Notes: generated from the letters alone by a model not told the origin. 64,000 nt of DNA from Marsupella aquatica (GCA_973895155.1 OZ316897.1:2433416-2497415), one strand, 5' to 3'. Shown: positions 16,086-55,524, numbered from the stretch's first letter. Made by a program: numbers and translations.

Positions 16086-16520
16086 TGCCATGCCGAGGGA
16101 CAGTGCCTCTTATGCACATCGGCATGTCCCTGGCATGCCCGCTAGGTATGTAGTTAGGGCTAGTGTACTACTTGAGTTAGCGACATGTTCTTATAACAAA
16201 TTCAAGCCGTTCTTGAAGAAAATGCGCTGTTAGTGTGACGCCTGGACTTGGCTTACTTAGGGCATGTTTTTCTTTGCCATTTTTCAATTCTTCTTGAATC
16301 GCTGTTGACAGAGCTCAGACAGTGCTTGTAGGTTCCGTACACGGGATTCACACAGTGATTCGTTAGCGGGTTCGTTAGATGCTTCCGGCCGATCTTGGCA
16401 TCCCGCCGGTTGTACGTCAATTCAATTTCAATACACTTGTTTCTCTTGCGCCTTGTATAATACAGAGGTTTACACCTCCACTACGTACATACTACCTCAT
16501 TTGCTTTTCCCTTACCACTT
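16086..16520 (+). mobile_element. Diverged solo A+B repeat of the DNMT/PHD retrotransposon family (3'-truncated)
   Basis: Begins TGCCATGCCGAGGGACAGTGCC at the same position as repeat A of the 33695 element, covers all of A, then continues directly into the start of B (ATACAGAGGTTTACACCTCCACTACG). Confidence 0.9.
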
Positions 16521-28300: not shown

Positions 28301-30165
28301 AGCAGCCTGTGGAAAAGGACTTCTCAGAACTTTCAATTTAGCTGCTCATATTTGATGCAAATATCCTAGCAAACCAAGTTGTGTAGATTAAGAACATAGA
28401 TTTAGACACACAGAGAAGGTGTCCTTAGGGCATGAGCATAAATGCGTTTCAAAACTCTTCGAAACATGCTATTTTCATATATCTGCTGTAGAGAGGCAAA
28501 CTTCTCTGCCAAAGACAGTTGATTGCTAGCATTTACTGGACAGATTATGGTCCTAAAAATGTCTTAATCTGATTCCCCCTGACACAAAACTATCATGCTC
28601 ACCTTGATATCATCAACGAGGTCATGCCTTCCAGCAGCTATCAGCTGCCGCCTAGTTGGCATAAAAATTTCAAAGCGCTCTTGCTTGAATTCTCCTCTCC
28701 ACAACATTAGTTGTTTAGCATCTGTTCAATTTACATCGAGATTGGTAGAGAACGTACAAGCTCATCAGAAATTTTGTTTCTTGCAGAGCACAAACGCTCA
28801 GGATTTCAGCGAGTACTGAAACAACAATAAGGGGAGCAGTTGGCAACTTTCACAACCACAATTTTTGTGGCAAATTCATTGGGAAAAGCTGCTGTTAGTC
28901 GTCAAAAATCAGACTTGTCTCACACAGTGTAGACTCACCATCGGAGAACCTTCCATTATTGGAAGTTCTGGCACTGTCGAGGCAACCCTTAATCCCATCA
29001 ATTTGACGCCGGCAGAAGTCTAGTAATTTAGGCTCTAGCTCCCTTAAGAGTTGAGGTATCCTTGCCAACTCCAAGAGGCCCTCTGGTGGCTGACATCAAC
29101 AACCAAAACGTGTTAAAAAGCGTTCCTAGCGACCAAAATTAACGAAACACGTATAAATGAAACGCAAAGGGGAGCCAATTTAGGACCTTCTTCAATTCAC
29201 TTTCGACCACCGAAGAATGGAAAAATTTCACAAACATAACTATTACTCGCTTTGGCTAATGCTTAGCATTGGACAAACACACTAGCCTTGAGAAATCGGT
29301 GGAATATCAGGTTTAGGGTTGCACTGCAAGTGTGTAAAACTTCGCTTCAGAATATTTTGCATTCAATTTCAAGGAGCTTTCAGTGCAAATGAAATTGCCA
29401 GGTTCTCAAGAGACTGGAAGGGCGATACACAATGCAAATGACGTCAAATAAACTAGACACCATATTCAGACATTGTAATTCGACTCTCAGCGAGCGATGA
29501 ATTCCAGCAATGGAGAGATAACTAACCGTGATAAAGAGACAACTGTTCTCGACATCCACCTCTCTTACAATATCCTCCACTAGCGGAATGAGAAACTCGG
29601 GATGATCCAATTCTTCACTATCCTCTGCATCACTTTGTGATTGCTCAAGGTCTTCATTTGGTGAACCAGAGATATAAATGAGCTTCAAAACAGATTCAAA
29701 TATCTCATCACTATCTGCAGATCCAATGTGTATGACTTCGTCAACAATTCCGACCACTTCCTTCGTATCTCTCAAAAGAACCTTCCACCCATGCAGATCT
29801 AGCGAACCCGTTGCGAGGCCTGTGAGTGTAAATGTCTCAATATTAGGTCCCGACGAACATCGCGAATCCCCAGTCTTCGTGAAAAAGTATCGCGACACCC
29901 CAAGATTTGATTTGGAGCTGAAACCACAACCAGCCCGGTAATGATCGTATGCGAATTTGGGTTTCTGAAGAAAGGACCGCTCACAACAGTCGAAAGGCAA
30001 GAGCGGAAAGCCCTTTGCAGCTGCCAAAAGTTGAGACTCGAACGCGAACGCTCTAGGGGTCAGTCCGCACGCACGGCTCTTCGATCCGGTCGACACGCTC
30101 GTCCCAAACTCTGGCCATGAGTTAGTGGGTTTGAGTGGAGATGTCCCCAAACACCAATCCATCAT
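25380..30165 (-). CDS. Multi-exon gene: N-terminal transit-peptide-like region, RimM-type PRC barrel and repeated 'P-x3-L-x3-GRxDL-x6-GG' units (probably organellar); 3' end approximate
   Basis: Exon 1 (30165-~29527) encodes DLHGWKVLL...VVGIVDEVI...EFLIPLVEDIVREVDVENSCLFIT and is spliced to PPEGLLEL (~29090), the typical RimM C-terminus. Later exons encode MPTRRQLIAAGRHDLVDDIK/AAGGFLAVAQSLNLRSRRRPNGFW, DPETG/EPVYYNQATGE (WW-like), MPRQRKVLEAGRYDLHH, FPSLKELRARGRHDLAYLLRRQGG and IPSQTSCLRDNRSDLRYLL. Confidence 0.75.
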
Positions 30166-31808: not shown

Positions 31809-33405
31809 ATGTTGTTGTGCCCCATCGCCGTTGTACCTTTTCCAGAACAGTACATCTGCCACTTTGCCTCGTGTTTCACAGCGCCAACTCAATTGAGGGC
31901 ATTTAGGCATGCACTCCAACTTGCTTTTGCTTTGGAGTCCTCAGACTCTTCATCTGAGGCAGACTCTCTTGACTTATCAGTGGGGTACTTGGAAGAAAAG
32001 GACCAGGGCAATGTTGACCTTTTATCAGGGTCAGATTTAGACCTCAATATGGAGTCCGATTCTTCTGACTCAGACAATGAAGATGGCACTGACGTACATA
32101 GTCCTACTTCCATGTTCGAGCTCTATTTTGTGTTATACAACACCAGATTTTTGGTCCCCAGGCATGTCACCACTAAGTCAGATGATTTTGCATCTCAATT
32201 CTTCCACAATTTGCCCAGTACATTGTTCAAGCAACTTACCAGAATGGACAAGAGCACCTTTTTTGGCCTGGTTGACAAAATCGAATGCCACCCCATCTTT
32301 GAGAACCACTCTAAGCATGCCCAGGCGCCAATCATTAGGCAGTTAGCAGTATGTCTATAGGCTGGGCCATGATGGCAATGGTGTTTGCATCAATCATTTG
32401 ATTCCAACCTGGGGAGTTAGTTGTGGCTCTCTTGTGAATTTTAGCAAGCGGTGCTTTGTGGCTCTAGAGGCAGTGCTTTCAAACCAAATTTCCTGGCCAG
32501 ACAGCACTCAGAGAGAAGAAAATTCAGAGGCATTTGCAGCTCTGGGCTTCCCAGGCTGTGTGGGGCTAATTGATGGTTCCCTATGCCTCTCACTCAACGT
32601 CCAAAGCTAGGCACATGGAGAATGTTATTATGATAGGAAGAGCCGGTACTCCATCAACACCCAGGTTGTATGTGACCACAGGCGGAAAATAATATTCATG
32701 TTCTCAGGTACCCTAATGCTTCTCTGTCTCTGCATCCCTCTATGCATACACCATTTGTTTCATGCTTGCAATTTACTTTACAATCCAATGCCAGTACAGT
32801 TTATAAGGGACCATTTTCCCATGTCATATGTTTCAGGAATGCCAGGGTCATGTGGTGACCTCACCTGCTTAAGGAGATCTCCCTTGTGGGAATATTGTAA
32901 CCAGGTGGGCAGGAATCCAGTGTTCCAAGAGGGGCAATATCTACTGGGCGACTCTGGGTACCAGGCTTGTCCCCATTTAGTGTGTTCCTTCAAACGGATT
33001 GACACTTCCATTAACAAGGAGGATTTCAATACCTGTGTTGCCAAGTGTCGTGTGACAAACGAACACTGCATTGGAGTTCTCAAATCTCGTTGGCATTCAC
33101 TGAAAGAGATCAGGGTGCAGCTCAATAACAAAAAAGACTATGTTTGGATGGTGAGATGGATAAGCCTCTATTGTAAATTGCATAACTATGTCATAAGTAA
33201 TAACGATGAGTGGACAGAGGATGACCAAGTGGACGACCAGGAGGAAGTAGTGGATGCAACAGAGCACCCTGAGTATGAAGGACAGCCTAGGGCTAGCAGG
33301 CGAGCAACGTCCCAGGCTGGGAATGCCTTGCTAGTGCAAGTCATGGACTATGCATTGGCTTTTCATAGACGCCCTGGGGGGTTTTTGGCAGTTGTACCCG
33401 AGTGA
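31809..33405 (+). pseudogene. Harbinger-type DDE transposase (HARBI1/DDE_Tnp_4-like), frameshifted; start uncertain
   Basis: FKQLTRMDKSTFFGLV; QLAVCL/YRLGH (frameshift ~32355); GFPGCVGLIDGS (frameshift ~32583); YYDRKSRYSINTQVVCD; intron 32708-32836 giving SGMPGSCGD; YLLGDSGY; RVTNEHCIGVLKSRW; KLHNY. Confidence 0.88.
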
Positions 33406-33694
33406 CAAATAAAGGTTGTCCCCATTTACTCTACCAAATCCCTTCTCATATCTTTTATGCTAGTTTGTGTTCCTTCCCGGTTCCTTCAAACTTCGGGCCA
33501 CTTTAGGGTTTTTCACTACGGTAATACATGTTGTTTACATTCTTCTGGCTCCATCGCTGTAGGTGTCAACTTAACGTGTGGCGTGCTTTTACATTGTCGA
33601 CCATTCCAGCCTGATCGATTATCGTTTGGCGAGACTGAACAATGCAGAATTAGAAGATTTGGCTTGTAGGGAGGGGGGTGACAGATGCCTTGGT

Positions 33695-34054
33695 TGTCAT
33701 GCCGAGGGACAGTGCCTCTTATGCACATCGGCATGTCCCTCGCCTGCCCGCTAGGTATGTAGTTAGGGCTAATGTACTACCTGAGTTAGCGACATGTTCT
33801 TGTAGCAAGTCTGGGCCGTTCTTGAAGCAAATGTGCTTGTTAGTGTGACGCCAGGACTTTGCTTGCTTAGGGCATGTCTTTCTTTGTCGATTTTTCAGTT
33901 CTTCTTGAATCGCTGTTGACAGAGCTCAGACAGTGCTCGTCGGTTCTGTACACGGGATTCACACAGTGATTCGTTAGATGCTCCCGGCCGATCTTGGCAT
34001 CCTGCCGGTTTTCGATTCGATTTCAGTACAATTGTTTCTCTCACGCCTTTTATT
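33695..34054 (+). repeat. Direct repeat A1 (360 bp)
   Basis: Colinear with A2 (43116-43475); about 10 substitutions by manual comparison. Confidence 0.95.
33895..33907 (+). promoter_or_regulatory. Predicted initiator/TSS (A33897) and 11-nt self-primer
   Basis: TCAGTT matches the Inr consensus. AGTTCTTCTTG (33897-33907) is the exact complement of the 11 nt that immediately follow A1. Confidence 0.7.
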
Positions 34055-34065
34055 CAAGAAGAACT
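34055..34065 (+). promoter_or_regulatory. Self-priming primer-binding site (Tf1-type; not a tRNA PBS)
   Basis: CAAGAAGAACT begins on the first base after A1 and pairs with 33897-33907. There is no TGG tRNA-type PBS. CTCTGTC (34064-34070) can also pair with GACAGAG (33918-33924). Confidence 0.78.
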
Positions 34066-34559
34066 CTGTCGCCAGGTTAGCGGTGAAGGGAAGAAGATCG
34101 GAGACGTTGTGCTTCTCAATTGCTCGAGACAATTGATGCTTTTCCGCTGATGCCGGTGCAATTTTTATGGAAAAACGTTGAGCGATGGGGTGGAAGTTAT
34201 GGCTTTGTGTATACACTTAAGTATATACACTTAAGTCAAACAGGTTCCCCCCCTCACTCTTTTCCTTCGCGCTTTGCTTTCAGGGTTTTCCGTTTCCGGC
34301 CGCTGCCAACTGCTGCTTCAACGCCTGCCACGACCCTTTTTCGGGCCATTTTTTTCGGTGTTTCTTTTGCCGGCCACGGCTGCCATCCTGCCTCGGCCGT
34401 AGCGCGACCATCTCCCCGCTGCCTCGACTACCGCGCGATCACCTCCGGCTGCCTCAGCCACCTCGCGAATACCTTCCGAGTGCATAGGGCCGCGCGCCCG
34501 TTTCTTCGCCTTATGTTTTAACGACTCTTTGGAGGGGCAGCGAACACAAGCCAGGAGCC

Positions 34560-35100
34560 GAGAGGAGAAGGCACAGAGGCCTATGCAGAATTAAAGAGGG
34601 AGGGGAGTTCACATTGACTCCCCTCGGGAGTCCTGCCAAGCACAAGGAGAGGAGGGGAAGCGCAAGGAGGGCACGAGGCCCTAGGCAACTTTAAAGCAGA
34701 GGGGGAGGGGGAGTACATTCCACTCCCTCTCTCGGGAGTCGTCCTGCAGGGCACAGAGCCCACTTTCAGCAGCATTAAACAGGGAGTGAGAGTGCCAGGA
34801 GAGGGCACGAGGCCCTAAGCAGCATTAAAGCAGGGGGAGGGCAACCAAGCATCAGCGACAGCAAGGAGGAGGGGGAGTTGAAGCACAAGGAGGGCACGAG
34901 GCCCTATGGAGAATTAATGGAGGGGGAGTACATACGACTCCTTCCCTCAGGAGTCTCCTGCAGGGCACGGAGCCCATTTTCAGCCTTAAGGAGGGGAGGG
35001 GAAGCGAGGCAGCATTAAAGGAGAGGAGGGGGGAGTTCGTAACCCCTTTTCGGGAGCTCCTAAGGAGGGGGCGCGAAGCCCTATGCAGGGCTCATGCCAT
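34560..35100 (+). repeat. Degenerate purine-rich tandem repeats in the retroelement 5' leader
   Basis: Recurring blocks GGGCACGAGGCCCTA, GCA(G)CATTAAAG, GGAGGGGGAGT and CTCGGGAGTC. Confidence 0.75.
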
Positions 35101-38100
35101 TAAGAGGGGCCCCTGCATCCGCCATTTCTTTCCCTTCGCCGAGTGTCCGAAGTGTATACACTTAATTCGGGCCCTTTTCTTTTCATTTTCGGCCGTTCTC
35201 GCTCATTCACCACGCGCGGGATGACAGCATAGGGCATTGGGGCCGGCCAGTCCTTCCGTTTTTGGGTCCACATAGGGGGCCCGAGGTATACACTTTAGGG
35301 GGCCCATTTTCCTCATATTCCTTTGCTGTCGCCGACGTCAGGTCGTCTGCATACGGCCCGGTATATACACACCGGACGGTCAATTCGGCATATACATAGG
35401 CAAACGCGAAGGGGGCTAAATTTGAGGTTTTAACGGTCCTTTTTCCCCGACGGTTTTTTTTTCGACGGTGACGGTTTTTCCTGGTGTTTACACATTTTGC
35501 ACATTTTCAGTATATCGGGTATTGCAACACAGTATGTCAGCAGACGAGCCAGGAGGTAGCAGCACATCGCCACCGACACCCAGGTACCATTTACGGAGTG
35601 ATCCACGATCATTGGTGCCAATTTCATTGGAGTCTCGTCAATTTCGACGACGTCCACAGACAGCAGCAGCACCCACACCACGCAATCCTTCTGCTCCATT
35701 TGGCGGTCGCTTCACCACTACTCCCAAGCCTGCTATCACTTCATTGCCATTTACCCTTTCTGCATCCGTGGTTGTTCCTGTTTCACCGACATACAGCATG
35801 GACGTCAGCCACTCATCTGGCCGCATTGAACGCTTCAGCGGGCGGCCAGGCATTGTTTCTTTGCGTGAGTTCAAATCCACTTTCTACACTGTCGTTTACG
35901 AATTGGAGTTGAAGTACGGCAGCAATTTCACAAATGCGTTTGCATTTAAGCAGCTAGCCAGGTATGTGCACCATGAGGCTTTAGATGTGTATGAGCAGCA
36001 CTCTCAATGGCTACTTGCTGTCACACAGTTGCCTAACCCTACCTATGCCAGTGCAATTGCGGCAGCTTCACAATTGGCCTTACAAAATGCCATTGCAGCC
36101 CATGCTGCTGCTCCTGCCACTTCCCCTCCTACTCCAGTTCCTACCACTGCGCCCGTTACTCCCACTGTCTTGGCACAGGCTACATCAGGCATTTCTCCCA
36201 CCATTGATTCCCCTGCCTTTGCTGATCCAGTGGCTGAGTTTTTCCAGGTTCTTGAATTGGAATTCCCAATCAAGAGTGCTGAAAAAATCATGCAGTTGGC
36301 CACCTTTGTGAGGCAGCGCGATGAAACCTTGAAGATGATGTATCGCCGGCTTCTCAAGCTGAAGGAGGACACCCAGAGCATCACTGACCTGGAAGCTGCT
36401 CATCGCTATCTTCGCGCATTGGAGGGCACACCAGCTCTCCATTCGCAAGTGTTGCAGCAAGTATTCTCAGAGTTTGGAGATAGCTACACCCTGCTCAATG
36501 TCTATGACACTGCTGAGAAACTTGAGTTGGCCCATGCACATTATGAGGCCAGTATTGCGCGTCCACCGCGATCCAGGTACCAGGCTGCTGCCCCTACACT
36601 GGCCACCCCTTCCCGTGTGCCACAATATGGTTCCAAGACCAAGCCAGCCCATGCTGCTTTCATGCTGCCATCTTGCAACTACTGTGGTAACCCCAATCAC
36701 AAGGCTAATGAGTGTGATATTGTTGTTGAGGACCTGTCTTGTGATTTTTGCGGGAAAGTGGGTCACTTGGAGGCAGTTTGTTTTGCCAAATTCCCAGAGC
36801 GGAAGCAGCTACGACAACAGGCCCCTCATCCTACTCCTGCTTCCACTCCCCCACCAGCTAGGAGGGCTCCTACTGCATCCACTGCTCCTCCTTCCAGTGG
36901 CAAAGCACCCGGTGCTAACAAATTGCCCAAGCAGCCACAGAAGCAACCAGCTCAGAAGGAGGCTCACAATGCACAGGCAACTCAACTCCAGTCTCTGACT
37001 CATGAGGTTGAGTCCTTACGTGCCCAACTTGCCAACATCAAAGGCAAGTCCACTGCCTCTGCTGGTCCTTCTCAACCGGCTGGTCACATGCAACCCATCC
37101 CTGGCCCAGGCACCGCTGACAGTTCAGCACCTCTACCCCGCTCTTTCTATGGCTTACCATTTGATGCTCATATGGGTGAGTGTGTGCTATCCTCTGCTCC
37201 ACAGCCTGGCCTTACAGCAGAATTTTCAGATTCATTCTGCCCTTCCTATTTTGCTTACCAGCAGGCCAGTGCTGCCTCCCGTATTGCTCCCACACGCCGC
37301 ATTGTACAGGCTGATGGTCTTGCTGCCGGTCCTCTGACTAGAGCCAGGGGCGCTCGGGCTGTCATGCCCCAATCTTTTCAGCCACTCACACTTGCTGAAG
37401 AGCGCACCTTGTTGGCAAGGGGGGAGGGAGCTGCAGCTACATCCATTCCACCACCAGGTGCTACTGACATTTCACAGGGAGTTGTTTCTCCTGAGCTGCT
37501 TGAGCATTTCACCTCCGGTATGGCACAAAGGATTCTTACAACTCCACTTTTCAGCTGCCATGATTTACAGCTGGATGCTAGAGCAGTCATCAGAGCGCTA
37601 GAGGGCTCACTGCATTCTTCGTCAGCCCCTGTGACACCGATTTTGGAGGTCCAATCTCATGTACATACTGGACCTTTTTCTTCTCCTTTACATGTTCCCA
37701 TTGGTTTGGCTGCCCCAATACCGATTGCTGCTGATTGTGTGACCAGAGCTACACTTGATTCTGGTCATGCTGCTCCATCTTTCCTGGCTATGTTGTTGAG
37801 TGGAAAGACCGTGGACAGTAACTCCCTTCACAAGGTACCTCATCATTTGCCAAGAGTGGTGCCTAGTGACAGGACTTCAGTTTCCACCACCATTGCCATT
37901 GTTGACAACAGGAATTCAGTGGTCAAGTTGGAGGGTCACACTCCTCAGGTGGTCATGCTAGACACAGGTGCTCAACCAGTGATATTGGGCATTCAATTTA
38001 CCAAGAAGATGGGACTGTTGACTGATCATTTACAGCAATCCAAGTGGCACATTCGGACTGCTAGTGGCACTGTGGAGGATGTGTTGGGTGAGAGTTCTAC

Positions 38101-38626
38101 TTTACTCACTCTCACTTTTAATGGAGGTACAGACCAGGAACTGCATTTCCCAGTCAGATGTTTGGTTACCAATGCCACTACGTATTATGTGCTCATTGGC
38201 CAGGAGGCTTTGTTCCCACCAGGTTTTACCATTGACAACTGGCATGAGCATGCATACTACAGAGTTGATTGGCATACTGATGGCTCACACTTGGGCTACA
38301 TTCCACTTGATTTGCATGGTGCCCATACACCTATGGCTCACCACTGTGTGTTGAAAGCAGTGCACACAGCTACCTATGTCAACCACCCATTGCAAGATTG
38401 GATTGAGGAGGATGACGATGAGGTGGCTGCTGCACATGCTGCTGCACGTATAGCAGCACTTTCCAGCAACGTGGATCATCAACCAGAGGTGGTACAACGG
38501 CTCCAAGCAGCCCATGGACCTTTGGTGGCTGCATTGCGCAAGTTTGAAGACCTTGGGCAGCACAATGGACAGCCAATAGCCCCAATCTTGAGCGCACCAG
38601 TTAAATGGACTCCTCCTTCAGATGGC

Positions 38627-39565
38627 CTTACATTGCTTGAGCTCTTTGGTGGCATTTCTATAGGCCTGGAAGCTCTCCTACAGTCTGGCATGGTGGTGAA
38701 GCAGTACATCTACGTGGACATTGATCCAAGTGCAAGGCAAGTGGCTGAATCCCGTCTGCTGGAATTTTCCGAGCGATTTCCCCAGCAGTTTCCACATAGT
38801 GCATGGAAGTCTGCATTTTCTTTCTTCCCTCCAGATATCTAGCTTGTCCAGCACCGGCACTTAACCCTTCTTGGCTCCCTTGATTTGATCATAGCTGGTT
38901 GGGAATGCCAAGGGTTTTCAGCTGCTGGTCACGGTGCTGGACTGCATGATTCTCGTTCTGGCCTTTTCACAGCATTGGTTCAGATTCTCACCTGGGCTCA
39001 ATTCCTTTATCCTGCTGTTGGTTATATCATTGAGAATACTCCATCTCAGTTTGACCAGCGTCCACAGGTCAAAGAGAATTTCAGTGTGGTCCAGCACTAC
39101 TTGGGACCACCCCTTCTCATTGATGCAGTGCATTGTGGTTCTTATGCACATCGTCTTCGTAACTTTTGGACTAACCTTGCACCACCTTCCTTGTTGGAGT
39201 TAGCTCTTCACCACACATCCAGGGACACTAACCTCACAGTGGACCAGATTTTGGATCCTGACAGTTCTTGCCAACCGGTTACACGGCAAGAGCCAGCACC
39301 TTGGTATCCAGCTAATACCATTGGACAGCTCCGTGCTGCTTGGCCTACTTTTGTGTCCTTTCCAGGTGCACATGCTTTTCAGGGTGATGGTCCTGGCCTG
39401 GTTTATCGACATTCTACCGGTACATGGGATGAACCTAGTCCTGAGGAGAGAGAACGGGCTATGGGCTTCCAACCCGGTACTACAGGTCACACCAAAATCA
39501 CCAGGCTGGCCAGGATTGCTTTACTTGGCAAGGTAATGGATCTTAATGCTCTCACTTGGCTTCTG
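38627..39565 (+). other. C5-cytosine DNA methyltransferase domain inside the polyprotein
   Basis: Motifs in canonical order: I LELFGGISIG, II YVDID, III DI, IV DLIIAGWECQGFS, V DSRSGLF, VI IIENT, VIII HRLRNFWTNL, IX PEERERAMGF, X LLGKVMD. Confidence 0.9.
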
Positions 39566-42500
39566 GTCACTTGCATCCTTTTTCAGATGTACATTCATCC
39601 AGCATCAGGAGTGCCAGCCCTACCACTCCATGGTGCTGCTACATGGCATCCAGACCAGGTGCACTTACCTCTGTCCAACACTCACCACTTCAGTTCAAGT
39701 GTTGGGGGGGAGGAGGTCCCTTGTAATGTGGCTGACATTATTTCTGAGTTTCATGGTGTGGATCAAACCAGAGCAACAGATACAGCAGGCCTTGGAGAGG
39801 CCTCATCACCTTATCAGCAGCATGCTAGTAGCTTGGACAGTGGAGAGGCTGGCACTTCTGGCTCTTCAAGCACGAGTACATCAGGTCCTATTCCTAGTGT
39901 TGCCAACTACACATTCATCATGGGCAACCACCTGAGTAAAAGACAGAAGGACCAGCTGCTGAATTTGCTCCTCAAGCATGAGAATGTGTTTGCTTTCTCT
40001 ATGAAGGACTTGGGTAAGTGCAAGACTATGCAGTTCTCCATTGAGTTGGCTGATGAAACACCTATCTTCAGGCGGAGACACCGTTTGAGTAAGCATGAGT
40101 GGCAGCTGGTGGATGAGAGATGCCAAGAGCTCTATGAAGCTGGTCTTATTCAGCCATCTACATCAGATTTTGCAGCAGCTACAATGATGCCAGCAAAGAA
40201 GGATTCCAGTGGATTGTGGACAGAGAAGCGCATGTGTGGGGACTACAGGCCACTGAACCTGGTCACACCCCAGGACAGGTATCCCATGCCACGGCCAGAG
40301 GAGCTATTTGACAGCATTGGAGACTCAGACATCTTCACTCTTGTGGATCTAAGGCAAGGCTTTAACCAGATTTTGCTGCTTGCAAAGGACCGCAAGAAAA
40401 CAGCTTTCCATGGTAGTAACCAACTATGGGAGTGGTTGGTGATGCCATTTGGCTTGAAGAATGCGCCCATATTCTTTCAAAGAGTCATGGATCAGGTTCT
40501 TCAAGGTGCTGAGTTTCTGAAATGCTACATTGATGATGTGTTGGTCCATAGCAAAGGATTTGACCAGCATCTACTTGACCTTGAGGAGCTATTCATGAGG
40601 CTTAAGAAGGTGAACCTAAAGATACACCCCAAGAAGTGTGAATTTGCTGTCAGATCAGTAGTATACCTTGGGCACCGCATTCTTCCAAATGGAACCATGG
40701 CTCACTGGGCCAAGGTGGTATCCATCTTGGAAATGCCCACCCCTACCGATGTTCACACTTTGAGGAGTTTTATTGGGTTGTGCAATTACTACCGGATCTA
40801 CATCAAAGATTTCAGTACCATTGCACACCCATTGTATGCTTTGTTGAAAAAGAATGTGACTTGGACATGGAGTACAGATGCTGAGGCAGCATTTGCCACT
40901 TTGAAGGAGAAGCTCTCAGAATACCCAGTGCTGAGAAGACCTGATTTCAGCAAGGTCTTTGTGCTACACATAGATTGGAGTGCCCTTGGGATTGGTGCCA
41001 TTCTGGGCCAGCATGATGAGGAAGGTAAAGAGTACGTCATTGCCTATGCATCCAGGAGCAACAATCAGGCAGAGAGTCATTATTCTTCTTATGAGGGTGA
41101 ATGCCTTGCTGTTGTGTGGGCTGTCATACATTATAGGCCCTACCTCTATGGGACCAGGTTTGTTCTCTACACCGACCACCAGCCCTTGAAGTGGTTGATG
41201 ACCAACGACAAGCTTACTGGCAAGCTTGCTCGTTGGGCGCTCATACTCCAGGAGTATGATTTTGAGGTAATTCATAGGCCTGGTGTGACACATCAGAATG
41301 CTGACACTATGTCCCGCAGCCCTTTGATTACCTCTGATGATTCCTCAGATGCACGGCAAGATTTTGACCAGGTTTCCATCCTGCCTACATTTCATGCATC
41401 GACCTATCTTGCTTTGCTGCCATGCTATGTTGTTGACCAACCTGTGGTGGACATATGGGAGGACAGCGACACTCTGAGATTTCTGCAGCATGGGGAGTAC
41501 CCCACACATGTTACTGCTGCCCAGAGAGACCGAATTCAACAAAGGTCCAAGCGCTACTTGTGGAAGGTAGATCATCTCGTGCGCTGCTTGCCAGACAGGG
41601 AAGTGGTGGTTCCACCCATTCATGAGAGGGTTGGCCTTATCCGTAAGGTATATTCTGAGCTTGATCATTTTGGCGTTAAGAGGACTTACAGCCTCTTGGT
41701 CCCTCATTATCATTGGAGAGGCATGCATGGCCAGGTTCGAGATGTTATTGCCCGGTGTGAACAGTGTGATAGGGTGAGGACTTCTTTCACATCTCGGCAA
41801 CCCACACTTCATCCACTCCCTATTCAGGGCATGTTTTATCGCTAGTCATGTGATTTGGCTGGAGAATTACCCCTCACATCTCGGGGTAATCTCTACATCA
41901 TGATCATGATAGAGCATTTCTCCAAGTGGATAGAACTTGTGGCATTGCCGGATAAGACCTCCCGTAGCACCAGCCAGGCATTCCTGCAACAAGTTCTCAG
42001 CCGCTTTGGAGCTTGTGCATAATGTCTCACTGACCAGGGCTCAGAGTTTAGAGGAGAGTTCCAGGAGCTGCTTGATCAGGCCCTCATTGATCATCGCCGG
42101 ACATCACGAGATCACCCACTGGCAGATGGCTTGGCAGAGCGCATGGTTCAGACATGCAAGAAGGGTCTCCGGAAGATCTGCCTCACCAAAAACAAGGAGG
42201 ATTGGGACCTGGCCTTACCCTACATTGCCATGGGGTATAGGATGTCCAGACATGCATCACTGTCTAACTTTTCTCCCTACTTCTTGTTGTTTGGTCGTCA
42301 CCCAGTTCCACCTTCTGCTATTGCTGCTCACATGCTTCAGTTGGTGGACTTGGATTCAGCTGTGACTTGGTCTGATGTGATCTCTGAGAGGGCTGCCCTA
42401 TTCAGGAGGGTTATGCCCATGGCCATGGAGAATTTGACCATTGCACAGCACAGGGACACACTACGTTATGCACACACACGAGGTGACACTTTTCAGCCCA

Positions 42501-42745
42501 AGGTCAGGAAGTTTGATGTGGGAGATTTTGTGTACTTGCAGCGGCAAGCTAACGACACCCTGGACACCTCTACCAATCGTACTATTCTTAGGGTTAAAGC
42601 TATTCGACCGTCTGGAGTGCTAGAGTTATAAGGGGCAGATGGGCGCACAATTGCTGACAATGCCAAGAACTGCGCCCCTTGTCATCTGCCTAACCTAGAT
42701 CCCACCATTGTGACTTCTACTTGGATTCCACCCGTGGACTACCCT

Positions 42746-42880
42746 TGCAAGGTGTGTTTGCGAATTGATGATGCTGACCAGATGCTGTTGTGTGACAATT
42801 GCAATGGAGGGTACCATCTTTTCTGCCTTTGGCCTGAACTTACCCAGGTGCCAGAAGGGTTATGGTTTTGCCCTTCTTGT
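42746..42880 (+). other. PHD zinc finger at the integrase C-terminus
   Basis: CKVC-x9-LCDNCNGGYHLFCLWPELTQVPEGLWFCPSC, a canonical C4HC3 pattern with the conserved W. Confidence 0.93.
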
Positions 42881-42930
42881 GCTCCACGTGCTACCTGAAT
42901 TTTCTTCAGCCCTCCTTTTGGCTATGGTCT

Positions 42931-42937
42931 GGGGGGG
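42931..42937 (+). promoter_or_regulatory. Putative polypurine tract (G7) abutting repeat B1
   Basis: GGGGGGG directly precedes the first base of B1; no purine tract precedes A2. Confidence 0.6.
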
Positions 42938-43113
42938 ATACAGAGGTTTACACCTCCACTACGTACATACCACTTCATTTGCTTTTTCTTGGCACTTGTG
43001 AATGTGATTGGACTTTTTCTATGCATGTTGGTTGCTAGCAGCTTGCACATATGCCTTGCCGGTGACTTGTATGTTTTTGATACACTATGGCTACGATACT
43101 ATATGTCATGACA
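42938..43113 (+). repeat. Direct repeat B1 (176 bp)
   Basis: Colinear with B2 (43476-43651); about 3 substitutions. Confidence 0.95.
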
Positions 43114-43122
43114 GCTGTCATG
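43107..43122. other. Perfect 16-bp palindrome at the B1/A2 junction (abutted element ends plus a GC spacer)
   Basis: CATGACA-GC-TGTCATG: right-end motif ...GACA, a 2-bp spacer, then left-end motif TGTC.... Confidence 0.92.
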
Positions 43123-43475
43123 CCGAGGGACAGTGCCTCTTATGCACATCGGCATGTCCCTCGCCTGCCCGCTAGGTATGTAGTTAGGGCTAGTGTACTA
43201 CCTGAGTTAGCGACATGTTCTTGTAGCAAGTCTGGGCCGTTCTTGAAGCAAATGTGCTTGTTAGTGTGACGCCAAGACTTTTCTTGCTTAGGGCATGTCT
43301 TTCTTTGTGGGTTTTTCAGTTCTTCTTGAATCGCTATTGACAGAGCTCAGACAATGCTCGTCGATTCCGTACACGGGATTCACACAGTGATTCGTTAGAT
43401 GCTCCCGGCCGATCTTGGCATCCTGCCGGTTTTCGATTCGATTTCAATACAATTGTTTCTCTCACGCCTTTTATT
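43116..43475 (+). repeat. Direct repeat A2 (360 bp)
   Basis: Copy of A1, joined without a spacer to B2 (CCTTTTATT|ATACAGAGG). Confidence 0.95.
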
Positions 43476-43651
43476 ATACAGAGGTTTACACCTCCACTAC
43501 GTATATACCACTTCATTTGCTTTTTCTTGGCACTTGTGAATGTGATTGGACTTTTTCTATGCATGTTGGTTGCTAGCAGCTTGCACATATGCCTTGCTGG
43601 TGACTTGTATGTTTTTGATACACTATGGCTACGATACTATATGTCACGACA
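43476..43651 (+). repeat. Direct repeat B2 (176 bp), right end of the element
   Basis: Copy of B1, ending ...CACGACA and followed by the TSD TGGT. Confidence 0.95.
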
Positions 43652-44616
43652 TGGTGTGGATTGCACTGCGAGGATTTCCATCATGGCCAGCTGGGCCTCG
43701 TGCTTCCTTCCAGCTACTTCATGGCGAAATTGAGAATTTTGACCCAGCATTTGTAGGCATGCAAGTCCTGGAGGTGGCAACACGGCCAGCCCTAATGTAT
43801 CCTAAGGCAGTCTTATTTGGGAGAGAGGAAGTGTCACCTGTGGAGCACATTGCTATGCCTGATCTACTTGTCATAAACATTGACGACTTTGGTGGAGACA
43901 CAGAGAGCACCGTCACAACTGTCTCTGCTGCTGCCGGGGAGGTGGATATAGCCGAGGTGTCTTTGGCGGGGTCTTTGGCAGAGTGTGCCCAGGGCAAAGG
44001 AGCTGCCACGCATTTGGGTCATCGCTAGGGGATTGCAAATGGATTATGTGTAGCTAGATTATCAGTATCAGTACCAGTTAGGATTTTTTGAGGTTAGCAT
44101 CGAACAAGGATTACCGGTGCTGTAAATGCGAGGAATAGAGGAGTAGGCAGAAACCATTTTCCATCCTGGCAATCGGGTGCCTCCAACTCCAATGTAATTT
44201 TGCTAACCTATGTTTGAACAGCATGATAAAAAAATTAGTCACTCGGTGTGACTAACACTTTTTTGTCTCAACTCTGTGAATACTGTGAACCGTTGCACAT
44301 GCTTCTTCCTGAATGTTGCAATCTTTTATTACAAAATTAAATGATAACACATCCTCAAAGTAGTATGACCAAGGTCTGCGACAGACAATGCTTGTACTAC
44401 CTTAAGAAGCGCATCTAAATGCTTCAAACAAACTGCCAAACACTGCTCTACAAAATAGAAGCACATTGCTTCTACAAAACTAAGGCAGCGGTACTTTTCC
44501 CGTATCGATGGCAGCGGTAGTTCTCCCTAATCAAGGATTACTAAGTGAGCCTCTACCGATTGTCCCCATGTGTTCACATGATCCAACTTTTCTTCAAGCT
44601 GGGCGCGTCACTGAGC

Positions 44617-49288: not shown

Positions 49289-51440
49289 TCATACGTGGAG
49301 AGATCTCATTGTGGCAGGTTTGGATAAAACATTGGGGGTGCACTTCTGAGTGCAACTGCTTTCATGGAACCGTGTCGAAGATCTCAATTCAACAAGAATG
49401 AGCCGCAGTATCGTCTCCACTTCGTCGATCCTCGGCCGGCTCGCTGGATCCAACGAGCAGCAATGAATCCCAAGAACGAGCATTCGTTTCAGCGCTTCTC
49501 CGTCGGGAGTCCCGAGCTTTGCAGTCAGTATGGCGCTCTCATTTCCAACTCTCACCTTCTCCTTCGCGAAGTCCGAGAGAAGGCTCATTGGTTGTCTCGA
49601 GGAATCCCAAGTGCGTTGCCAATTCCAGAAGGACGACTCCAAAACTGTACACATCACTCGATCCGTTCCATTGCTGCGTTTGCTGGAAGCCTGGATCGAC
49701 ATATCCAGGAGAACCAGCCGCGGCGTCATTATCCGAACAGCCGAAGATGTTGGCCATGGAGTAGAGCGTAGTTCCTGACTCGATCGAGCTCTCCGGACTC
49801 CACCTCAGTATTTTGGCGTTGCTCAGATCTGCAAGCTTGGCGTGGTAGCGGCAATCCAAGAGAATGTTTGTAGATTTCACATCTCGATGATAGATCGGGG
49901 AGTCGAAATTGAAGTGTAGGTGCTTGAGTGCGATAGCAACATCGATCGCAATGCGCAACCGGTCTGCAATGTGTGAGTGCAAGTGTTTCCCGTAATGTCC
50001 TTGCAGATGCTGTCTTAGATTGCCGTTTGGAATGAATTCGAAAACTATGAGCGGATCCGCCTTCTTTGGCAAGAAACCAAGCAGCGTCACTAATGGCAAA
50101 TTTGGTTGGGCAGTGGTATTGACTGACTTCTTTATGTAAGAATTGACAGCGACCTCGTAAAGAACCTTACGCAAAGAAGCGTCCGTGACCTTCTTCAATC
50201 TCTTGACAGCTATGAACTGCTCGCTAAACTGATCGATACCTTTGTAGACAACTGACGTGTTTCCATCAGCGCCTTTTAAGGCGCGAGAGAAATTATTTGT
50301 TGCTCTCTGCAAAACCATGTGTTCCGTCCGACTGCCCTCTGACATCTGTACCATTTTATAAACTGTGTCGCTGCTGACGAGCAGTCAAGGATGGATATGC
50401 ATCACATGAACCAAAAAATCTAATATCAGAAAATTTGATATTAGATTCGATCTTGGTCGTTTGATTAATATAATATGCAGGACATGAAGCAAAAGGTCTA
50501 GTAGTAATCAGACATTAGGCAGACAGTGACATCGAGCATTCAGACCTATCGATTGAATCGATTGATCGGGAACTTCGCATGGCTGTATTGGTTACTGCAA
50601 TTTAGTCCGAGATAAGATTATGCCAAATGGAAGAATTAGGGGCATATAGGACATTTGCAGATCGAAGTGGCGCGGCCAATAGTCTCCACAGTAGGTTTCG
50701 AAAGTTTGCCTGCACTAGGTAGCTAGTATGGCAGGGTCACTAGGTAGCTAGTATGGCAGGGTGATATACGAAAGCAGTGTTTGTCATAGGATTCAGATGT
50801 GAGCCGTGAGCCTCGGCACGACTACCGTAGTAAGGGTCAAACAGATGTTAAAACCGCTCAACCGCAAATCCCTTTTTTATAGCATTAGACAATGTAAGAT
50901 TCTGAAGCTAAGGAAAATTAGAAAATCGAGGATTATGAAGTCTGGTCAGTGTGAATTCCGAAGTTTTCTTATCATTAGAAGAACATTCAATTGAAGCAAA
51001 CCTCCATCGATTTTGTGTCTTGCAAAAAAGACATGCACGAAATCGTCCCACGTAGCGGAATCGACACTAATGTAGTGCTTGAATTCTTCTAGATGCTCTT
51101 CGACAATTTGTTTTGTCAAAATTGATGAGAGACCTTCCTGTAAGGCCCACATTGTGATCAATGTAAGCCACTTCACGGCTTTCCTGCAAGCCGTGGGCTG
51201 TTTCAAGTAGTTAATCTCTTTCGCCCACTCGGCTTCCGGGACAATAGTGTCATCGTTGCTCGACGCGATAGGAATGATGTCAACCGCATTCCAACCAGAA
51301 AGGATCGTTGAGGCTTTCACAAGGGCATTACTAAGCACGAATCGAGTAGCCTTGGACGATTGTCAGGGAAATGAAAGAATTTCAGTTTTCGTCATCAATT
51401 CAAGCACGGTGCTCCCCTTGCTTGATTGCTATTGTCCCAT
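49289..51440 (-). pseudogene. Disrupted RLK/Pelle cytoplasmic kinase gene with a Gag-like N-terminal exon
   Basis: The kinase exon has IAVKRL, YHRDVKSTNILL, DLS (for DFG), GSPGYVDP and SDVYSFGVVLLELA, then a frameshift near 49610 continuing WDSS...CCSLDPASRP. The upstream exon (51440-~51002) starts MGQ*QSS and contains two in-frame stops. Confidence 0.75.
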
Positions 51441-54400: not shown

Positions 54401-54447
54401 ATTTTGGCAAAACTCCAGCCAAGCGATTTGCGCGATGGCAGTGGTTG

Positions 54448-55524
54448 ATGGAGTCCAACCTCGTGCGAATCCCGGACATCCGCATCTTCTCATATAAAGA
54501 CGTACACCATGCCACTCAATGCTTTGCTCCTCGAAATTGGCTTGGCGAAGGCCAACACGGGAGAGTTTATCAGGGTCGGCTGGCAATGCCACCAGACCGG
54601 CAATTGCAAGCCGTAGCGATCAAGAGATTCAAATCAACGCCTGCCGATCCCATGTACCGCATCCTCGCAGAACTGAGAGTCCATAAAGCTATTGCAAAAC
54701 GTTCCCCTTCACCTCCCACTGACTTGAGACAATTGCTCGGCGTGTGCTTCCATATCAGCGGCCCACTCTTGGTGTACGAGTTTGTGCCCAATGGCACATT
54801 GAGGCAGCATCTGCGCCGAGATCCCCGGAGTTCGGCCTTGATGGGGAGTGCCATGGTGCGTCTATCGATAGCCATTGATATCGCCCACGCTCTCTGTGAA
54901 CTCCACTATGGTTTCTCGTTACCAATCTATTACCGAAACCTCAAGTCATCCAAGATTCTCATCGAGAACGATCTCCATGCGAAGCTCGCTGATTTTGGCG
55001 ATGCAGTGATTGTCAAAACTGACTCCGATCTGCTTACTCCTGTGGCGATTGGCACTATTGGGTATAAAGACCCTGTTTATGAGAAGACATGCTGGGCGGG
55101 TGACAAGACGGACGTCTACAGCTTTGGTGTCATACTCATGGAACTAGCGACTCACCTCCCCGCGTGGGACCCCAAGAAGCCCACGCCGCTGCTTGCCGAT
55201 TTTGTGATGGAGAGAATGAGAGGAAACCGAGGACCTGGAGCGGACAGCGAGGATACCGATACCGTAGAGAAAATCATACATCCAGGGACCGTGCATGGAG
55301 GAATGACCCTGATGAAAGATCTTCTGTATCTGGCTGTCCAGTGCTGCAATTTAGACTTGAGCTGTAGACCGAGAATTGATGAGGTCCATGCCGCCTTACT
55401 GCAAGTGCAATTGCAGAGCATAGAAATGTTGTTGTTATGTAGCGGGGACGAACTTATGACCGATCTTCCTCCAAGCTCTCCGACTCCAAGCTCTCCTCCC
55501 TGCACAACTCCGTGGAAGCCATAG
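54448..55524 (+). CDS. RLK/Pelle cytoplasmic pseudokinase (may have additional 5' exons)
   Basis: FSYKDVHHAT, LGEGQHGRVYQG, VAIKRF, LVYEFVPNGTL, DFG, GTIGYKDP and DVYSFGV are present, but the catalytic loop is YYRNLKSSKIL (HRD Asp and the Asn are replaced). Confidence 0.85.
   Translation: MESNLVRIPDIRIFSYKDVHHATQCFAPRNWLGEGQHGRVYQGRLAMPPDRQLQAVAIKRFKSTPADPMYRILAELRVHKAIAKRSPSPPTDLRQLLGVCFHISGPLLVYEFVPNGTLRQHLRRDPRSSALMGSAMVRLSIAIDIAHALCELHYGFSLPIYYRNLKSSKILIENDLHAKLADFGDAVIVKTDSDLLTPVAIGTIGYKDPVYEKTCWAGDKTDVYSFGVILMELATHLPAWDPKKPTPLLADFVMERMRGNRGPGADSEDTDTVEKIIHPGTVHGGMTLMKDLLYLAVQCCNLDLSCRPRIDEVHAALLQVQLQSIEMLLLCSGDELMTDLPPSSPTPSSPPCTTPWKP

What the first reader, a model, noticed from the sequence alone, without database searches (positions are those of the whole stretch)
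33695..43651. Integrase-encoding retrotransposon with circularly permuted LTRs: apparent integration from a 2-LTR circle cut at an internal palindrome
Seen: the element is A1(360)-body-B1(176)-GC-A2(360)-B2(176), bounded by TG...CA and a 4-bp TSD. The primer site abuts the 3' end of A1 and a G7 tract abuts the 5' end of B1. The TG/CA integrase motifs are not at those priming boundaries; they sit head-to-tail at the B1/A2 junction. Established: PBS and PPT define the ends of the linear cDNA. Split direct repeats of this A...B-A-B layout characterise tyrosine-recombinase retroelements (PAT, Ngaro, TOC1), not DDE-integrase Gypsy elements, and I see no tyrosine recombinase here. IS3/IS911-family DDE transposases integrate from circles with abutted ends. 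Inference: the reverse-transcribed LTR is B-GC-A. Ligating the linear cDNA ends creates exactly the observed A2|B2 junction (CCTTTTATT|ATACAGAGG). Cutting the upstream copy of CA^GC-TG on both strands then yields exactly A-body-B-GC-A-B with one GC lost. The 2-LTR circle, normally a dead end, would be the obligate integration substrate. I do not know of a description of this for an integrase-based element, but cannot search the literature.
Basis: partly seen in the sequence, partly recalled or inferred. Interest (0 to 1): 0.96.

Follow-up and report, generated by a model that had tools for sequence, protein, structure and literature searches.

The report
Gypsy retrotransposon with circularly permuted LTRs
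This is a decayed copy of a plant, integrase-bearing retrotransposon whose repeats are arranged A-genes-B-A-B; the layout is family-wide and was noted once in print, and its sequence scars suggest that the ends made by reverse transcription are joined to each other while integrase cuts at an internal palindrome.

Summary
The layout is A1(360)-body-B1(176)-GC-A2(360)-B2(176), with TG..CA ends, a TGGT duplication and a unique 16-nt palindrome at B1/A2. It is not a one-off: relatives from Calypogeia fissa and from JGI metagenomes show the same layout, in 70 independent insertions, with 4-bp duplications.

The element encodes gag, protease, a Dnmt3-like methylase, RT, RNase H, a DDE integrase and a PHD finger. 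No tyrosine recombinase was found.

The first bases of the predicted RNA pair with the site that abuts A1 (Tf1-type self-priming) and co-vary across families. A G-run abuts B1 everywhere. The A2|B2 joint varies by 1-5 nt between close relatives, as an end-joined junction would. The B-GC-A site reads as one ancestral GC with C-to-T decay.

Two corrections are needed. First, the layout was already noted in 2018 for KnitGypsy-Dnmt3 of Klebsormidium, without a mechanism, and integrase cleavage of palindromic LTR-LTR junctions is published for PFV and HIV. Second, a closed 2-LTR circle holds two identical palindromes and predicts both permutations, yet only one is seen (70 to 0). An extra asymmetry is therefore required, and the circle itself is unproven.

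The parts
33691..33694 (+). Left copy of the 4-bp target-site duplication (TGGT)
   Evidence: Read; identical to 43652-43655.
33695..34054 (+). A1: left terminal repeat, starting TGTCATG. Read as the 3' part of U3 plus R-U5.
   Evidence: 97.2% identical to A2. Its 5' end is also an insertion boundary in the independent fragment at 16086.
33897..33910 (+). Predicted 5' end of the genomic RNA, acting as self-primer (AGTTCTTCTTGAAT)
   Evidence: Exact complement of 34052-34065. The same pairing, with different sequence, occurs in L001, L003 and seven further full-length copies (L016 and L021 are the same insertion). Compensatory pairs. In the L001-type family a TATAAAAGG box lies about 33 nt upstream.
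34052..34065 (+). Primer-binding site for self-primed minus-strand synthesis; it straddles and abuts the 3' end of A1
34567..35031 (+). 5' untranslated region with degenerate repeats spaced about 90-135 nt apart
   Evidence: families D3-D5.
35426..38839 (+). Frame-0 reading frame for gag (weak CCHC knuckle), aspartic protease and the N-terminal part of the DNMT; ends at an in-frame stop at 38840
   Evidence: gag-asp_proteas E 3.7e-5; zf-CCHC E 0.02.
38843..41842 (+). Same frame: DNMT motif region (ECQGFS), RT, RNase H and the integrase zinc finger; ends at a stop at 41843
   Evidence: DNA_methylase 4e-5, RVT_1 3e-28, RT_RNaseH 1e-37, Integrase_H2C2 1e-10. The DNMT of relative P0009 is nearest to DNMT3A/3C, weakly.
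41846..42628 (+). Integrase catalytic core (rve), broken by a stop at 42020 and ended by a stop at 42629
   Evidence: rve E 2e-6 on 41846-42019. Intact rve in relatives.
42632..42898 (+). [quoted passage not shown]
   Evidence: PHD E 2.9e-12.
42931..42937 (+). G7 polypurine tract, the plus-strand primer site, directly 5' of B1
   Evidence: The G-run directly abuts B1 in 52 of 58 insertions; the other six have point changes in the run.
42938..43113 (+). B1: 5' part of U3, ending CATGACA
43107..43122 (.). 16-nt perfect palindrome with the B end (..ACA), a GC spacer (43114-43115) and the A start (TGT..) abutted. Proposed integrase site, uncut in this LTR copy.
   Evidence: unique in the window. 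A 2-nt spacer in W, L001, L002 and L003, none of which was selected by the search pattern. Spacer census GC 39, GT 32, AC 31, AT 14. The same ACA-GC-TGT site lies after the PPT in Pleodorina, Gonium and L131.
43116..43475 (+). A2: second copy of A
43476..43651 (+). B2: right terminal repeat, ending CACGACA. The A2|B2 joint at 43475/43476 is the former cDNA ends joined together.
   Evidence: Junction heterogeneity in relatives.
43652..43655 (+). Right copy of the target-site duplication (TGGT)
16086..16508 (+). Separate fragment of the same family: flank|A(1-359, 86%)|B(1-49), then truncated. Probably a solo A|B remnant.

Best explanation
The element is a dead copy of a Ty3/gypsy-type retrotransposon. 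Its genes run gag, protease, Dnmt3-like DNMT, RT, RNase H, DDE integrase, PHD finger. It sits in a plant genome, probably a liverwort, and belongs to the same kind as KnitGypsy-Dnmt3.

Proposed cycle:
1. Transcription starts inside A, about 158 nt before its end.
2. The first 11-14 nt of the RNA fold back on the site that abuts A1 and prime minus-strand synthesis, as in Tf1.
3. The plus strand starts at the G-run that abuts B.
4. Reverse transcription therefore makes a linear cDNA [B-GC-A]-body-[B-GC-A]. Its tips (the start of B and the end of A) are not integrase ends.
5. The integrase ends (TGTCATG.. and ..CATGACA) lie abutted, 2 bp apart, inside each LTR.
6. Integrase cuts both strands 3' of CA at this palindrome, in the PBS-proximal LTR copy only. 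This gives recessed CA-OH ends with a 5' GC overhang, and it inserts them with a 4-bp stagger.
7. The two original cDNA tips are joined to each other by error-prone end joining. This happens either before integration (a 2-LTR circle) or after it (repair of the gap left in the chromosome).
8. The product is A-body-B-GC-A|B.

Shown by sequence: the layout, the TG/CA ends, the duplications, the positions of PPT and PBS, the PBS covariation, the joint heterogeneity and the strict polarity.

Inferred: the RNA ends, the cDNA form, cleavage at the palindrome, and the joining route. The reason for the polarity is also inferred. My guess is that the PBS-proximal LTR becomes double-stranded about 9 kb of synthesis earlier than the other, so integrase commits to it first.
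For: - Layout, ends and duplication in the window.
- Same layout in Calypogeia fissa (L002, L003) and in a metagenome relative (L001).
- The 120 fetched loci reduce to 70 unique insertions among the 101 that could be parsed. All read body-Grun-B-NN-A|B-flank.
- Perfect 4-bp duplications in W, L001, L003, L016, L018, L063 and L070.
- Self-primer/PBS complement of 13-16 nt in 10 of the 12 distinct full-length copies, with three different sequences across families and an in-family double change in L063.
- In the RNAalifold helix, 6 of the 16 pairs that join the RNA 5' end to the PBS carry compensatory changes.
- A TATA box lies about 33 nt upstream of the primer start in the L001-type family.
- The G-run directly abuts B1 in 52 of 58 insertions. 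The A2|B2 joint is canonical in only 28 of 58 by the strict pattern. Its offsets of -5 to +2 nt are scattered among close relatives on the tree.
- A1|PBS is invariant in the full-length copies.
- The spacer census fits one ancestral GC plus C-to-T decay on either strand.
- rve and H2C2 are present and no tyrosine recombinase is found.
- Precedent for integrase cutting a palindromic LTR-LTR junction into 3'-processed ends: PMC1180852 and PMC1905944.
- Precedent for self-priming: PMC4600332.
Against: - No RNA, cDNA or circle was observed; every step of the cycle is inferred from integrated copies.
- All copies found in the liverwort-type families are degenerate; no reading frame longer than 1300 aa exists in any fetched locus except L124. 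No active copy is at hand.
- The strict polarity (70:0) is not explained by anything in the sequence. My timing argument is untested.
- The metagenome loci were selected with a pattern that fixed a 2-nt spacer. Constancy of the spacer length therefore rests on only four unselected loci (W, L001, L002, L003).
- The window copy and L003 have no recognisable TATA box upstream of the primer.
- One algal relative (L131) has a layout that the model explains only by assuming that 9 kb was captured at the joint.
Confidence: 0.6

Rival explanations
1. A covalently closed 2-LTR circle is the obligate substrate and is cut at one of its internal palindromes, with nothing else deciding which one.
For: It explains the permutation, the single remaining GC and the exact A|B joint. 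The joint looks end-joined. Integrases can cut such palindromes.
Against: The circle carries two identical palindromes within identical LTR sequence. Both permutations should therefore arise, including dead-on-arrival A|B-GC-A-body-B insertions. None is seen among 70 independent insertions. By my arithmetic, 0.5 to the power 70 is about 1e-21. The model needs an added asymmetry, and with that it merges into the best explanation.
Confidence: 0.1
2. The A|B joint is made by reverse transcriptase, not by ligation. RT would switch templates end to end, from the end of A to the start of B. The integration substrate would then be a linear cDNA that was never circular.
For: Template switching at blunt ends also gives small untemplated additions and losses, as seen at the joint. 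It would be directional by nature if only one strand end can switch.
Against: I could not write a switch that yields only the observed polarity without also assuming that integrase has already cut the PBS-proximal palindrome. Two-nt microhomology joints (TTCA-AT-ACATG; 10 of the 70 unique insertions) are more typical of cellular end joining. Nothing in the sequence speaks for a third strand transfer.
Confidence: 0.15
3. A DIRS/PAT/Ngaro-type mechanism: a tyrosine recombinase, supplied in cis or in trans, integrates a circle.
For: The A-body-B-A-B layout is the hallmark of PAT, Ngaro and TOC1, and of SymbioDIRS-Dnmt3.
Against: No Phage_integrase hit in any ORF scanned on either strand, nor in the precomputed domains of 140 relatives. 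The element has TG..CA ends, a 7-bp terminal inverted repeat and 4-bp duplications at independent sites. These are the signature of a DDE integrase.
Confidence: 0.02
4. A one-off rearrangement or misassembly of an ordinary element with complete AB LTRs.
For: None beyond prior expectation.
Against: The same layout is found in the Calypogeia fissa genome assembly, in another genome window and in 70 independent insertions from eight metagenome assemblies. No AB-body-AB copy was seen. PPT and PBS are where the permuted model puts them.
Confidence: 0.01

Closest known systems
KnitGypsy-Dnmt3 of Klebsormidium nitens (de Mendoza et al. 2018, PMC5890265)
   Same: A Gypsy-type pol with a Dnmt3-like methyltransferase inside the polyprotein. 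The Fig. [quoted passage not shown] Host in the streptophyte lineage.
   Different: That paper gives no ends, duplications, PBS/PPT positions or mechanism. Direct homology of the window element to the Klebsormidium copies was not tested here, because no K. nitens sequence was retrieved. The window family also carries a C-terminal PHD finger; I could not check whether KnitGypsy does.
PAT / Ngaro / TOC1 and SymbioDIRS-Dnmt3 (tyrosine-recombinase retroelements with split direct repeats)
   Same: The A1-body-B1-A2-B2 repeat layout. A frequent association with a DNA methyltransferase domain.
   Different: Those elements encode a tyrosine recombinase. This family instead has a DDE integrase, TG..CA ends, 4-bp duplications, a PPT and a PBS.
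Tf1 / Tj1 self-primed LTR retrotransposons (PMC4600332)
   Same: The PBS is complementary to the first bases of the element's own RNA and directly follows the 5' repeat.
   Different: Tf1 and Tj1 have ordinary complete LTRs at both ends, and their integrase acts on the cDNA tips.
Integrase cleavage of the palindromic 2-LTR circle junction in foamy virus and HIV-1 (PMC1180852, PMC1905944, PMC4372172)
   Same: A retroviral-type integrase cuts abutted CA/TG ends inside a palindrome and yields 3'-processed ends.
   Different: In those viruses the palindrome is the ligated junction itself, so cutting it restores the normal linear genome. Here the palindrome is inherited inside U3 and the ligated junction is left uncut, so the product is permuted. 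In the viruses this route is optional and debated; here it would be obligatory.
IS3 / IS30-family insertion sequences (my own knowledge; not checked with the tools)
   Same: A DDE enzyme uses a junction of abutted ends separated by 2-3 bp as its integration substrate.
   Different: Those are DNA transposons, and the junction is made by the transposase from a donor copy. Here it is copied by reverse transcription as part of U3.

Membership tests
Ty3/gypsy (Metaviridae-type) LTR retrotransposon | Pol order protease - RT - RNase H - DDE integrase, with gag upstream | tested here: met
   protease, RVT_1, RT_RNaseH, Integrase_H2C2 and rve in one frame, in that order. The gag assignment is weak (CCHC E 0.02).
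Ty3/gypsy (Metaviridae-type) LTR retrotransposon | Two complete identical LTRs, one at each end | tested here: not met
   the left end has only A, and the right end has B-GC-A-B. This holds in all 70 insertions.
Ty3/gypsy (Metaviridae-type) LTR retrotransposon | TG..CA termini and a short target-site duplication | tested here: met
   TGTCATG..CATGACA, with a 4-bp duplication in W and six other full-length copies.
Ty3/gypsy (Metaviridae-type) LTR retrotransposon | PBS after the 5' repeat and PPT before the 3' repeat | tested here: met
   However, they bracket B-GC-A and not the integrated termini.
KnitGypsy-Dnmt3 kind (Gypsy with DNMT and DIRS-like repeats) | Dnmt3-type C5 methyltransferase inside pol | tested here: met
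   (PF00145, E 4e-5, just above the cut-off; the domain is split by the stop at 38840). (PF00145 in P0001, P0004, P0009, P0015 and P0016). (best solved relatives are DNMT3A/3C, weak, E 2e-4).
KnitGypsy-Dnmt3 kind (Gypsy with DNMT and DIRS-like repeats) | A-body-B-A-B repeat arrangement | tested here: met
   The definition is taken from the legend quoted.
KnitGypsy-Dnmt3 kind (Gypsy with DNMT and DIRS-like repeats) | Sequence relatedness to the Klebsormidium elements | not tested
   No K. nitens protein or locus appeared, and none was fetched.
DIRS / PAT / Ngaro tyrosine-recombinase retroelements | Encodes a tyrosine recombinase | tested here: not met
   no PF00589 in any ORF of either strand. 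None in the precomputed domains of relatives.
DIRS / PAT / Ngaro tyrosine-recombinase retroelements | Split direct repeats A1..B1A2B2 | tested here: met
Tf1/sushi-type self-primed elements | PBS complementary to the 5' end of the element's own mRNA | tested here: inconclusive
   Complementarity and covariation are met, and TATA spacing fits in one family. The actual RNA 5' end cannot be seen with these tools.

The most novel reading that the evidence does not exclude
The element's own Dnmt3-like methylase is what breaks the symmetry. The first LTR duplex would be methylated inside the particle. After the second strand transfer its two strands end up in different LTR copies, so the two CAGCTG palindromes would be hemimethylated on opposite strands. 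Integrase would then accept only one of them. That would explain the 70:0 polarity. It would also explain why methyltransferases (Dam-like in DIRS, Dnmt3 in SymbioDIRS, KnitGypsy and this family) keep turning up in retroelements with split direct repeats. It would give the long-unexplained methyltransferase domain of these elements a mechanistic role in integration.
Probability: 0.07. Interest if true: 0.9.

Novelty: new member of a known kind. Interest (0 to 1): 0.6.

Why it matters
Split direct repeats (A..B-A-B) have been a puzzle since TOC1 and PAT, and they have been tied to tyrosine recombinases. This family shows the same layout with a classical integrase. Because it keeps a readable PBS, PPT, TG/CA ends and duplications, the integrated copies record how the layout arises:

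- The cDNA tips are joined to each other, with end-joining-like scars.
- The integrase works on an inherited internal palindrome of abutted ends.

If confirmed, this would be a retroelement in which a normally dead-end reaction (joining of the LTR ends) and host end joining are obligatory steps. Its integrase would behave like an IS3/IS30 transposase. The strict polarity poses a sharp question that can be tested. The same PPT-B-GC-A site in volvocine algae suggests an old and widespread lineage in green plants that standard LTR finders would mis-annotate.

Tried and rejected
- **tRNA-type PBS.** The bases after A1 do not start TGG. I dropped this in favour of the self-primer, which co-varies.
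- **Ordinary LTR = A|B with PBS after B and PPT before A.** Rejected, because B1 follows the pol stop and the G-run, and A1 is followed by the PBS.
- **LTR = A alone, with B-GC as a 3' untranslated region.** This leaves B2 and the CA end unexplained.
- **Search for the sister permutation.** None among 120 loci. The 21 loci that failed my first parser were checked one by one and are normal or truncated. L110 shows A-end|B-NN-A|B, but it is a 1.4-kb contig with the same flank as L014 and L071, which carry body sequence upstream. It is probably an assembly cycle.
- **An unselected sample of spacer lengths.** The loci hold no further B/A junctions.
- **Literature searches for a mechanism** found none. 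The REM1 paper is not held.
- **Distant relatives were mostly uninformative.** L124 and L130 are collapsed or tandem assemblies. L125 shows no LTRs. In L129 the repeats belong to a canonical chromovirus in which the PHD element is nested. In L126 only 18 nt match at the candidate 5' end (TGTCACGACACACTGCGT at 9914), with no A or B repeat detectable.
- **P0011** had no DNA on record.
- P0058 and P0116 are spliced gene models.
- I took no contig for human.

Full report
**1. The observation**

- A1 33695-34054 and A2 43116-43475 are 97.2% identical over 360 nt. B1 42938-43113 and B2 43476-43651 are 98.3% identical over 176 nt. GC lies between B1 and A2.
- The element starts TGTCATG and ends CACGACA, and TGGT flanks both sides.
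- A G7 run ends exactly where B1 begins, 32 nt after the pol stop codon.
- The B1/A2 junction is a perfect 16-nt palindrome, CATGACAGCTGTCATG. It is unique in the window; 0.02 matches are expected by chance even with two mismatches allowed.
- The A2|B2 joint is the last base of A before the primer site followed by the first base of B after the G-run.

**2. What the element encodes**

One reading frame runs from 35426 to 42895 and is interrupted by four in-frame stops, at 38840, 41843, 42020 and 42629. Its Pfam hits, in order, are:
- a weak CCHC knuckle;
- an aspartic protease;
- a C5 DNA methylase motif region;
- RVT_1;
- RT_RNaseH;
- the integrase H2C2 zinc finger;
- the rve core;
- a PHD finger.

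No tyrosine recombinase, and nothing else, was found in any other ORF scanned on either strand.

The methylase of an intact relative is nearest, though weakly, to DNMT3A/3C among solved structures. The copy is therefore a dead Ty3/gypsy-type element with a DDE integrase.

The surrounding genes look plant-like: a STIG1-like protein, protein kinases and a PIF/Harbinger DDE_Tnp_4 ORF. The closest named proteins are from the liverwort Calypogeia fissa, at 83% and 64% identity. I took no contig for human.

**3. The layout is not a one-off**

Loci fetched through related proteins show the same layout.
- L001 comes from a JGI metagenome and is 75% identical in protein. It reads A1, body, G8, B1, AC, A2, B2, with duplication GGTC.
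- L003 comes from C. fissa and reads the same way, with spacer GC and duplication CACC. Its repeats are 99.3-100% identical.
- L002, also from C. fissa, has G7, B1, GC, A2, B2.

A scan of metagenome contigs with the junction pattern returned 120 loci.
- Of the 101 loci that could be parsed, removing duplicates by 3' flank leaves 70 independent insertions.
- Every one reads body, G-run, B, NN, A|B, flank.
- The 21 loci that my first parser missed were inspected individually and are normal or truncated.

Among full-length copies, W, L001, L003, L016, L018, L063 and L070 have perfect 4-bp duplications. Two more match at 3 of 4 positions.

No copy has complete AB repeats at both ends.

**4. The priming sites**

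*Minus strand.* The 14 nt at 34052-34065 are the exact complement of 33897-33910 inside A1. By my arithmetic, such a match is expected about once in 20,000 elements by chance.
- The same arrangement recurs in the relatives. Thirteen to 16 nt inside A, 118-158 nt before its end, pair with the site at the end of A1.
- The sequence differs between families: AGTTCTTCTTGAAT in W, AGTTTTTCTAGAATT in L001 and AGTCTTTCTTCAGT in L003.
- L063 carries a double compensatory change within its family.
- RNAalifold pairs the 5' end with the 3' end. Six of the 16 pairs that join the 5' end to the PBS carry compensatory changes.
- In the L001-type family a TATAAAAGG box lies about 33 nt upstream of the paired segment. 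The segment is therefore the predicted RNA 5' end.

This is the signature of Tf1/Tj1-type self-priming (PMC4600332).

*Plus strand.* The G-run directly abuts B1 in 52 of 58 insertions, and the remaining six have point changes in the run.

U3 is B plus GC plus the first ~200 nt of A. R-U5 is the last ~158 nt of A.

**5. The two junctions behave differently**

*The A2|B2 joint varies.* Only 28 of 58 insertions have the commonest form by the strict pattern.
- The others lose or gain 1-5 nt on either side. Examples on the A side are ..TTCA|, ..TTCAA|, ..TTCAATT| and ..TTCAATA|. On the B side there is one extra G from the G-run, or the first 2, 4 or 5 nt of B are missing.
- Ten of the 70 unique insertions show a joint that can be read as a 2-nt AT microhomology.
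- The variants are scattered among close neighbours on a tree built from the rest of the LTR.
- In contrast, the A1|PBS sequence and the G-run|B1 boundary in the same copies are constant.

This is what a junction made anew at each transposition from the two cDNA tips would look like.

*The B-NN-A spacer looks inherited.* The counts are GC 39, GT 32, AC 31 and AT 14, plus a few others. This fits one ancestral GC with C-to-T decay on either strand of CAGCTG.

All four loci that were not selected by my pattern have a 2-nt spacer. The pattern fixed the spacer length, so constancy of length rests on those four alone.

**6. Mechanism**

Cutting 3' of CA on both strands of ..ACA-GC-TGT.. gives two recessed CA-OH ends with a 5' GC overhang. 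This is the same chemistry as processed retroviral ends. It accounts for the TG..CA termini, the duplication and the loss of one GC. The permutation follows if the cut is in the PBS-proximal LTR copy and the cDNA tips are joined.

The census adds a constraint. A closed 2-LTR circle has two identical palindromes within identical LTR sequence. It should give A|B-GC-A-body-B as often as the observed form. Such copies would be dead, but they would still be insertions. None is seen among 70; by my arithmetic, 0.5 to the power 70 is about 1e-21.

The choice of site is therefore made before the two copies become equivalent, or something marks them.
- My preferred inference concerns timing. After the second strand transfer, the PBS-proximal LTR becomes double-stranded after about 0.5 kb of synthesis. 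The other LTR needs the plus strand to cross about 9 kb first. Integrase could therefore commit to the first.
- The order of cutting and joining is also open. Circle first, or concerted integration from the linear cDNA followed by repair of the remaining break, give the same product.
- A template switch by reverse transcriptase could also make the joint.

None of this can be settled from integrated copies.

**7. Comparison with what is known**

The layout in a DNMT-bearing Gypsy element is stated in the Fig. 4c legend of de Mendoza et al. 2018 for KnitGypsy-Dnmt3. No ends, priming sites or mechanism are given there. My searches found no other description.

Integrase cleavage of the palindromic 2-LTR junction is published for foamy virus and HIV-1. 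In those cases the cut junction is the ligated one, so the genome is restored and not permuted.

The window element is therefore a new member of a kind that has been noted but not characterised. What is new here is the mechanistic reading and its supporting evidence: self-priming, scars at the joint, and strict polarity.

**8. Wider distribution**

A profile search found hundreds of RT-RNase H-(DNMT)-integrase-PHD polyproteins. They come from Haematococcus, Pleodorina, Gonium and many metagenomes.

The motif G-run, short B, ACA-GC-TGT, A is present in several of them:
- Pleodorina starrii, with a 28-nt perfect palindrome;
- Gonium pectorale, with a 55-nt B and an 11-nt self-primer site that abuts A1;
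- L131, with a 111-nt B.

L130 has a TACAGCTGTA palindrome downstream of its pol. L124 has GCGTCAGCTGTCGC about 200 nt after a G7 run.

These single loci do not establish the integrated layout in algae. No B2 was found in the Gonium copy. L131 reads A1-PBS-0.97 kb-PPT-B1-GC-A2-9 kb with an intact pol-B2, with duplication GCAG. I can explain this only as DNA captured at the joint.

**9. Limits**

- All liverwort-type copies are degenerate.
- Most loci come from short-read metagenome assemblies.
- RNA, cDNA and circles were not observed.

Noticed in passing
window 16086-16508: A second, older fragment of the same family: unrelated flank, then A (86% identical), then the first 49 nt of B directly joined, then truncation. 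It is probably a solo A|B left by recombination between A1 and A2, or a directly integrated A|B piece.
   Followed up: partly
window 32698-33405: An ORF with a DDE_Tnp_4 (PIF/Harbinger transposase) domain ends about 290 bp upstream of the element. It is unrelated to the element's own integrase.
   Followed up: partly
window 19466-20026; 49539-60565: A STIG1-like ORF and three protein-kinase ORFs. With the RimM-like hit at 29380-30165, they point to a plant genome.
   Followed up: no
window 34567-35031: The long 5' untranslated region (1.4 kb between PBS and gag) holds degenerate G-rich repeats spaced about 90-135 nt apart. Their function is unknown.
   Followed up: no
B ends of L008, L010, L023, L033, L120 and others (e.g. 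L010:4539-4573): The last 23 nt of B carry the terminal motif twice (GTCACGACA-CTACA-TGTCAYGACA). This may be a second integrase binding site at the right end only.
   Followed up: no
L131:5887-17055: An algal relative reads A1-PBS-0.97 kb-G7-B1-GC-A2-9 kb (intact 1895-aa pol)-B2, with duplication GCAG. The 9 kb lies exactly where the A|B joint should be. This may be filler DNA captured during end joining, or a layout I do not understand.
   Followed up: partly
L126:16774-16860 (Pleodorina starrii; same locus in three assemblies, L126-L128): A G7 run, a 52-nt B and a 28-nt perfect palindrome around ACA-GC-TGT follow an intact 2113-aa pol gene. The gene is conserved at one locus in three assemblies, with no detectable terminal repeats. 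It may be a domesticated or LTR-less copy.
   Followed up: partly
L124:2810-8038: In this relative the DNMT hit lies between RNase H and integrase. In the window family it lies between protease and RT. The methylase has moved or was acquired twice within the clade.
   Followed up: no
L130:1-20469: The contig is 1.77 tandem units of 11,535 bp at 99.99% identity, with one LTR region per unit. It could be a collapsed assembly, a real tandem array or a circular form.
   Followed up: no
L109 (element-orientation B ending at about oriented 2865): One copy has G-run-B followed directly by flank, without GC-A-B, and another element is nested inside it. It could be an A-body-B form or a deletion between B1 and B2.
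   Followed up: partly
Methyltransferase domains recur in retroelements with split direct repeats: Dam-like in DIRS, and Dnmt3 in SymbioDIRS, KnitGypsy and this clade. The palindrome core CAGCTG is a CHG site on both strands.
   Followed up: no
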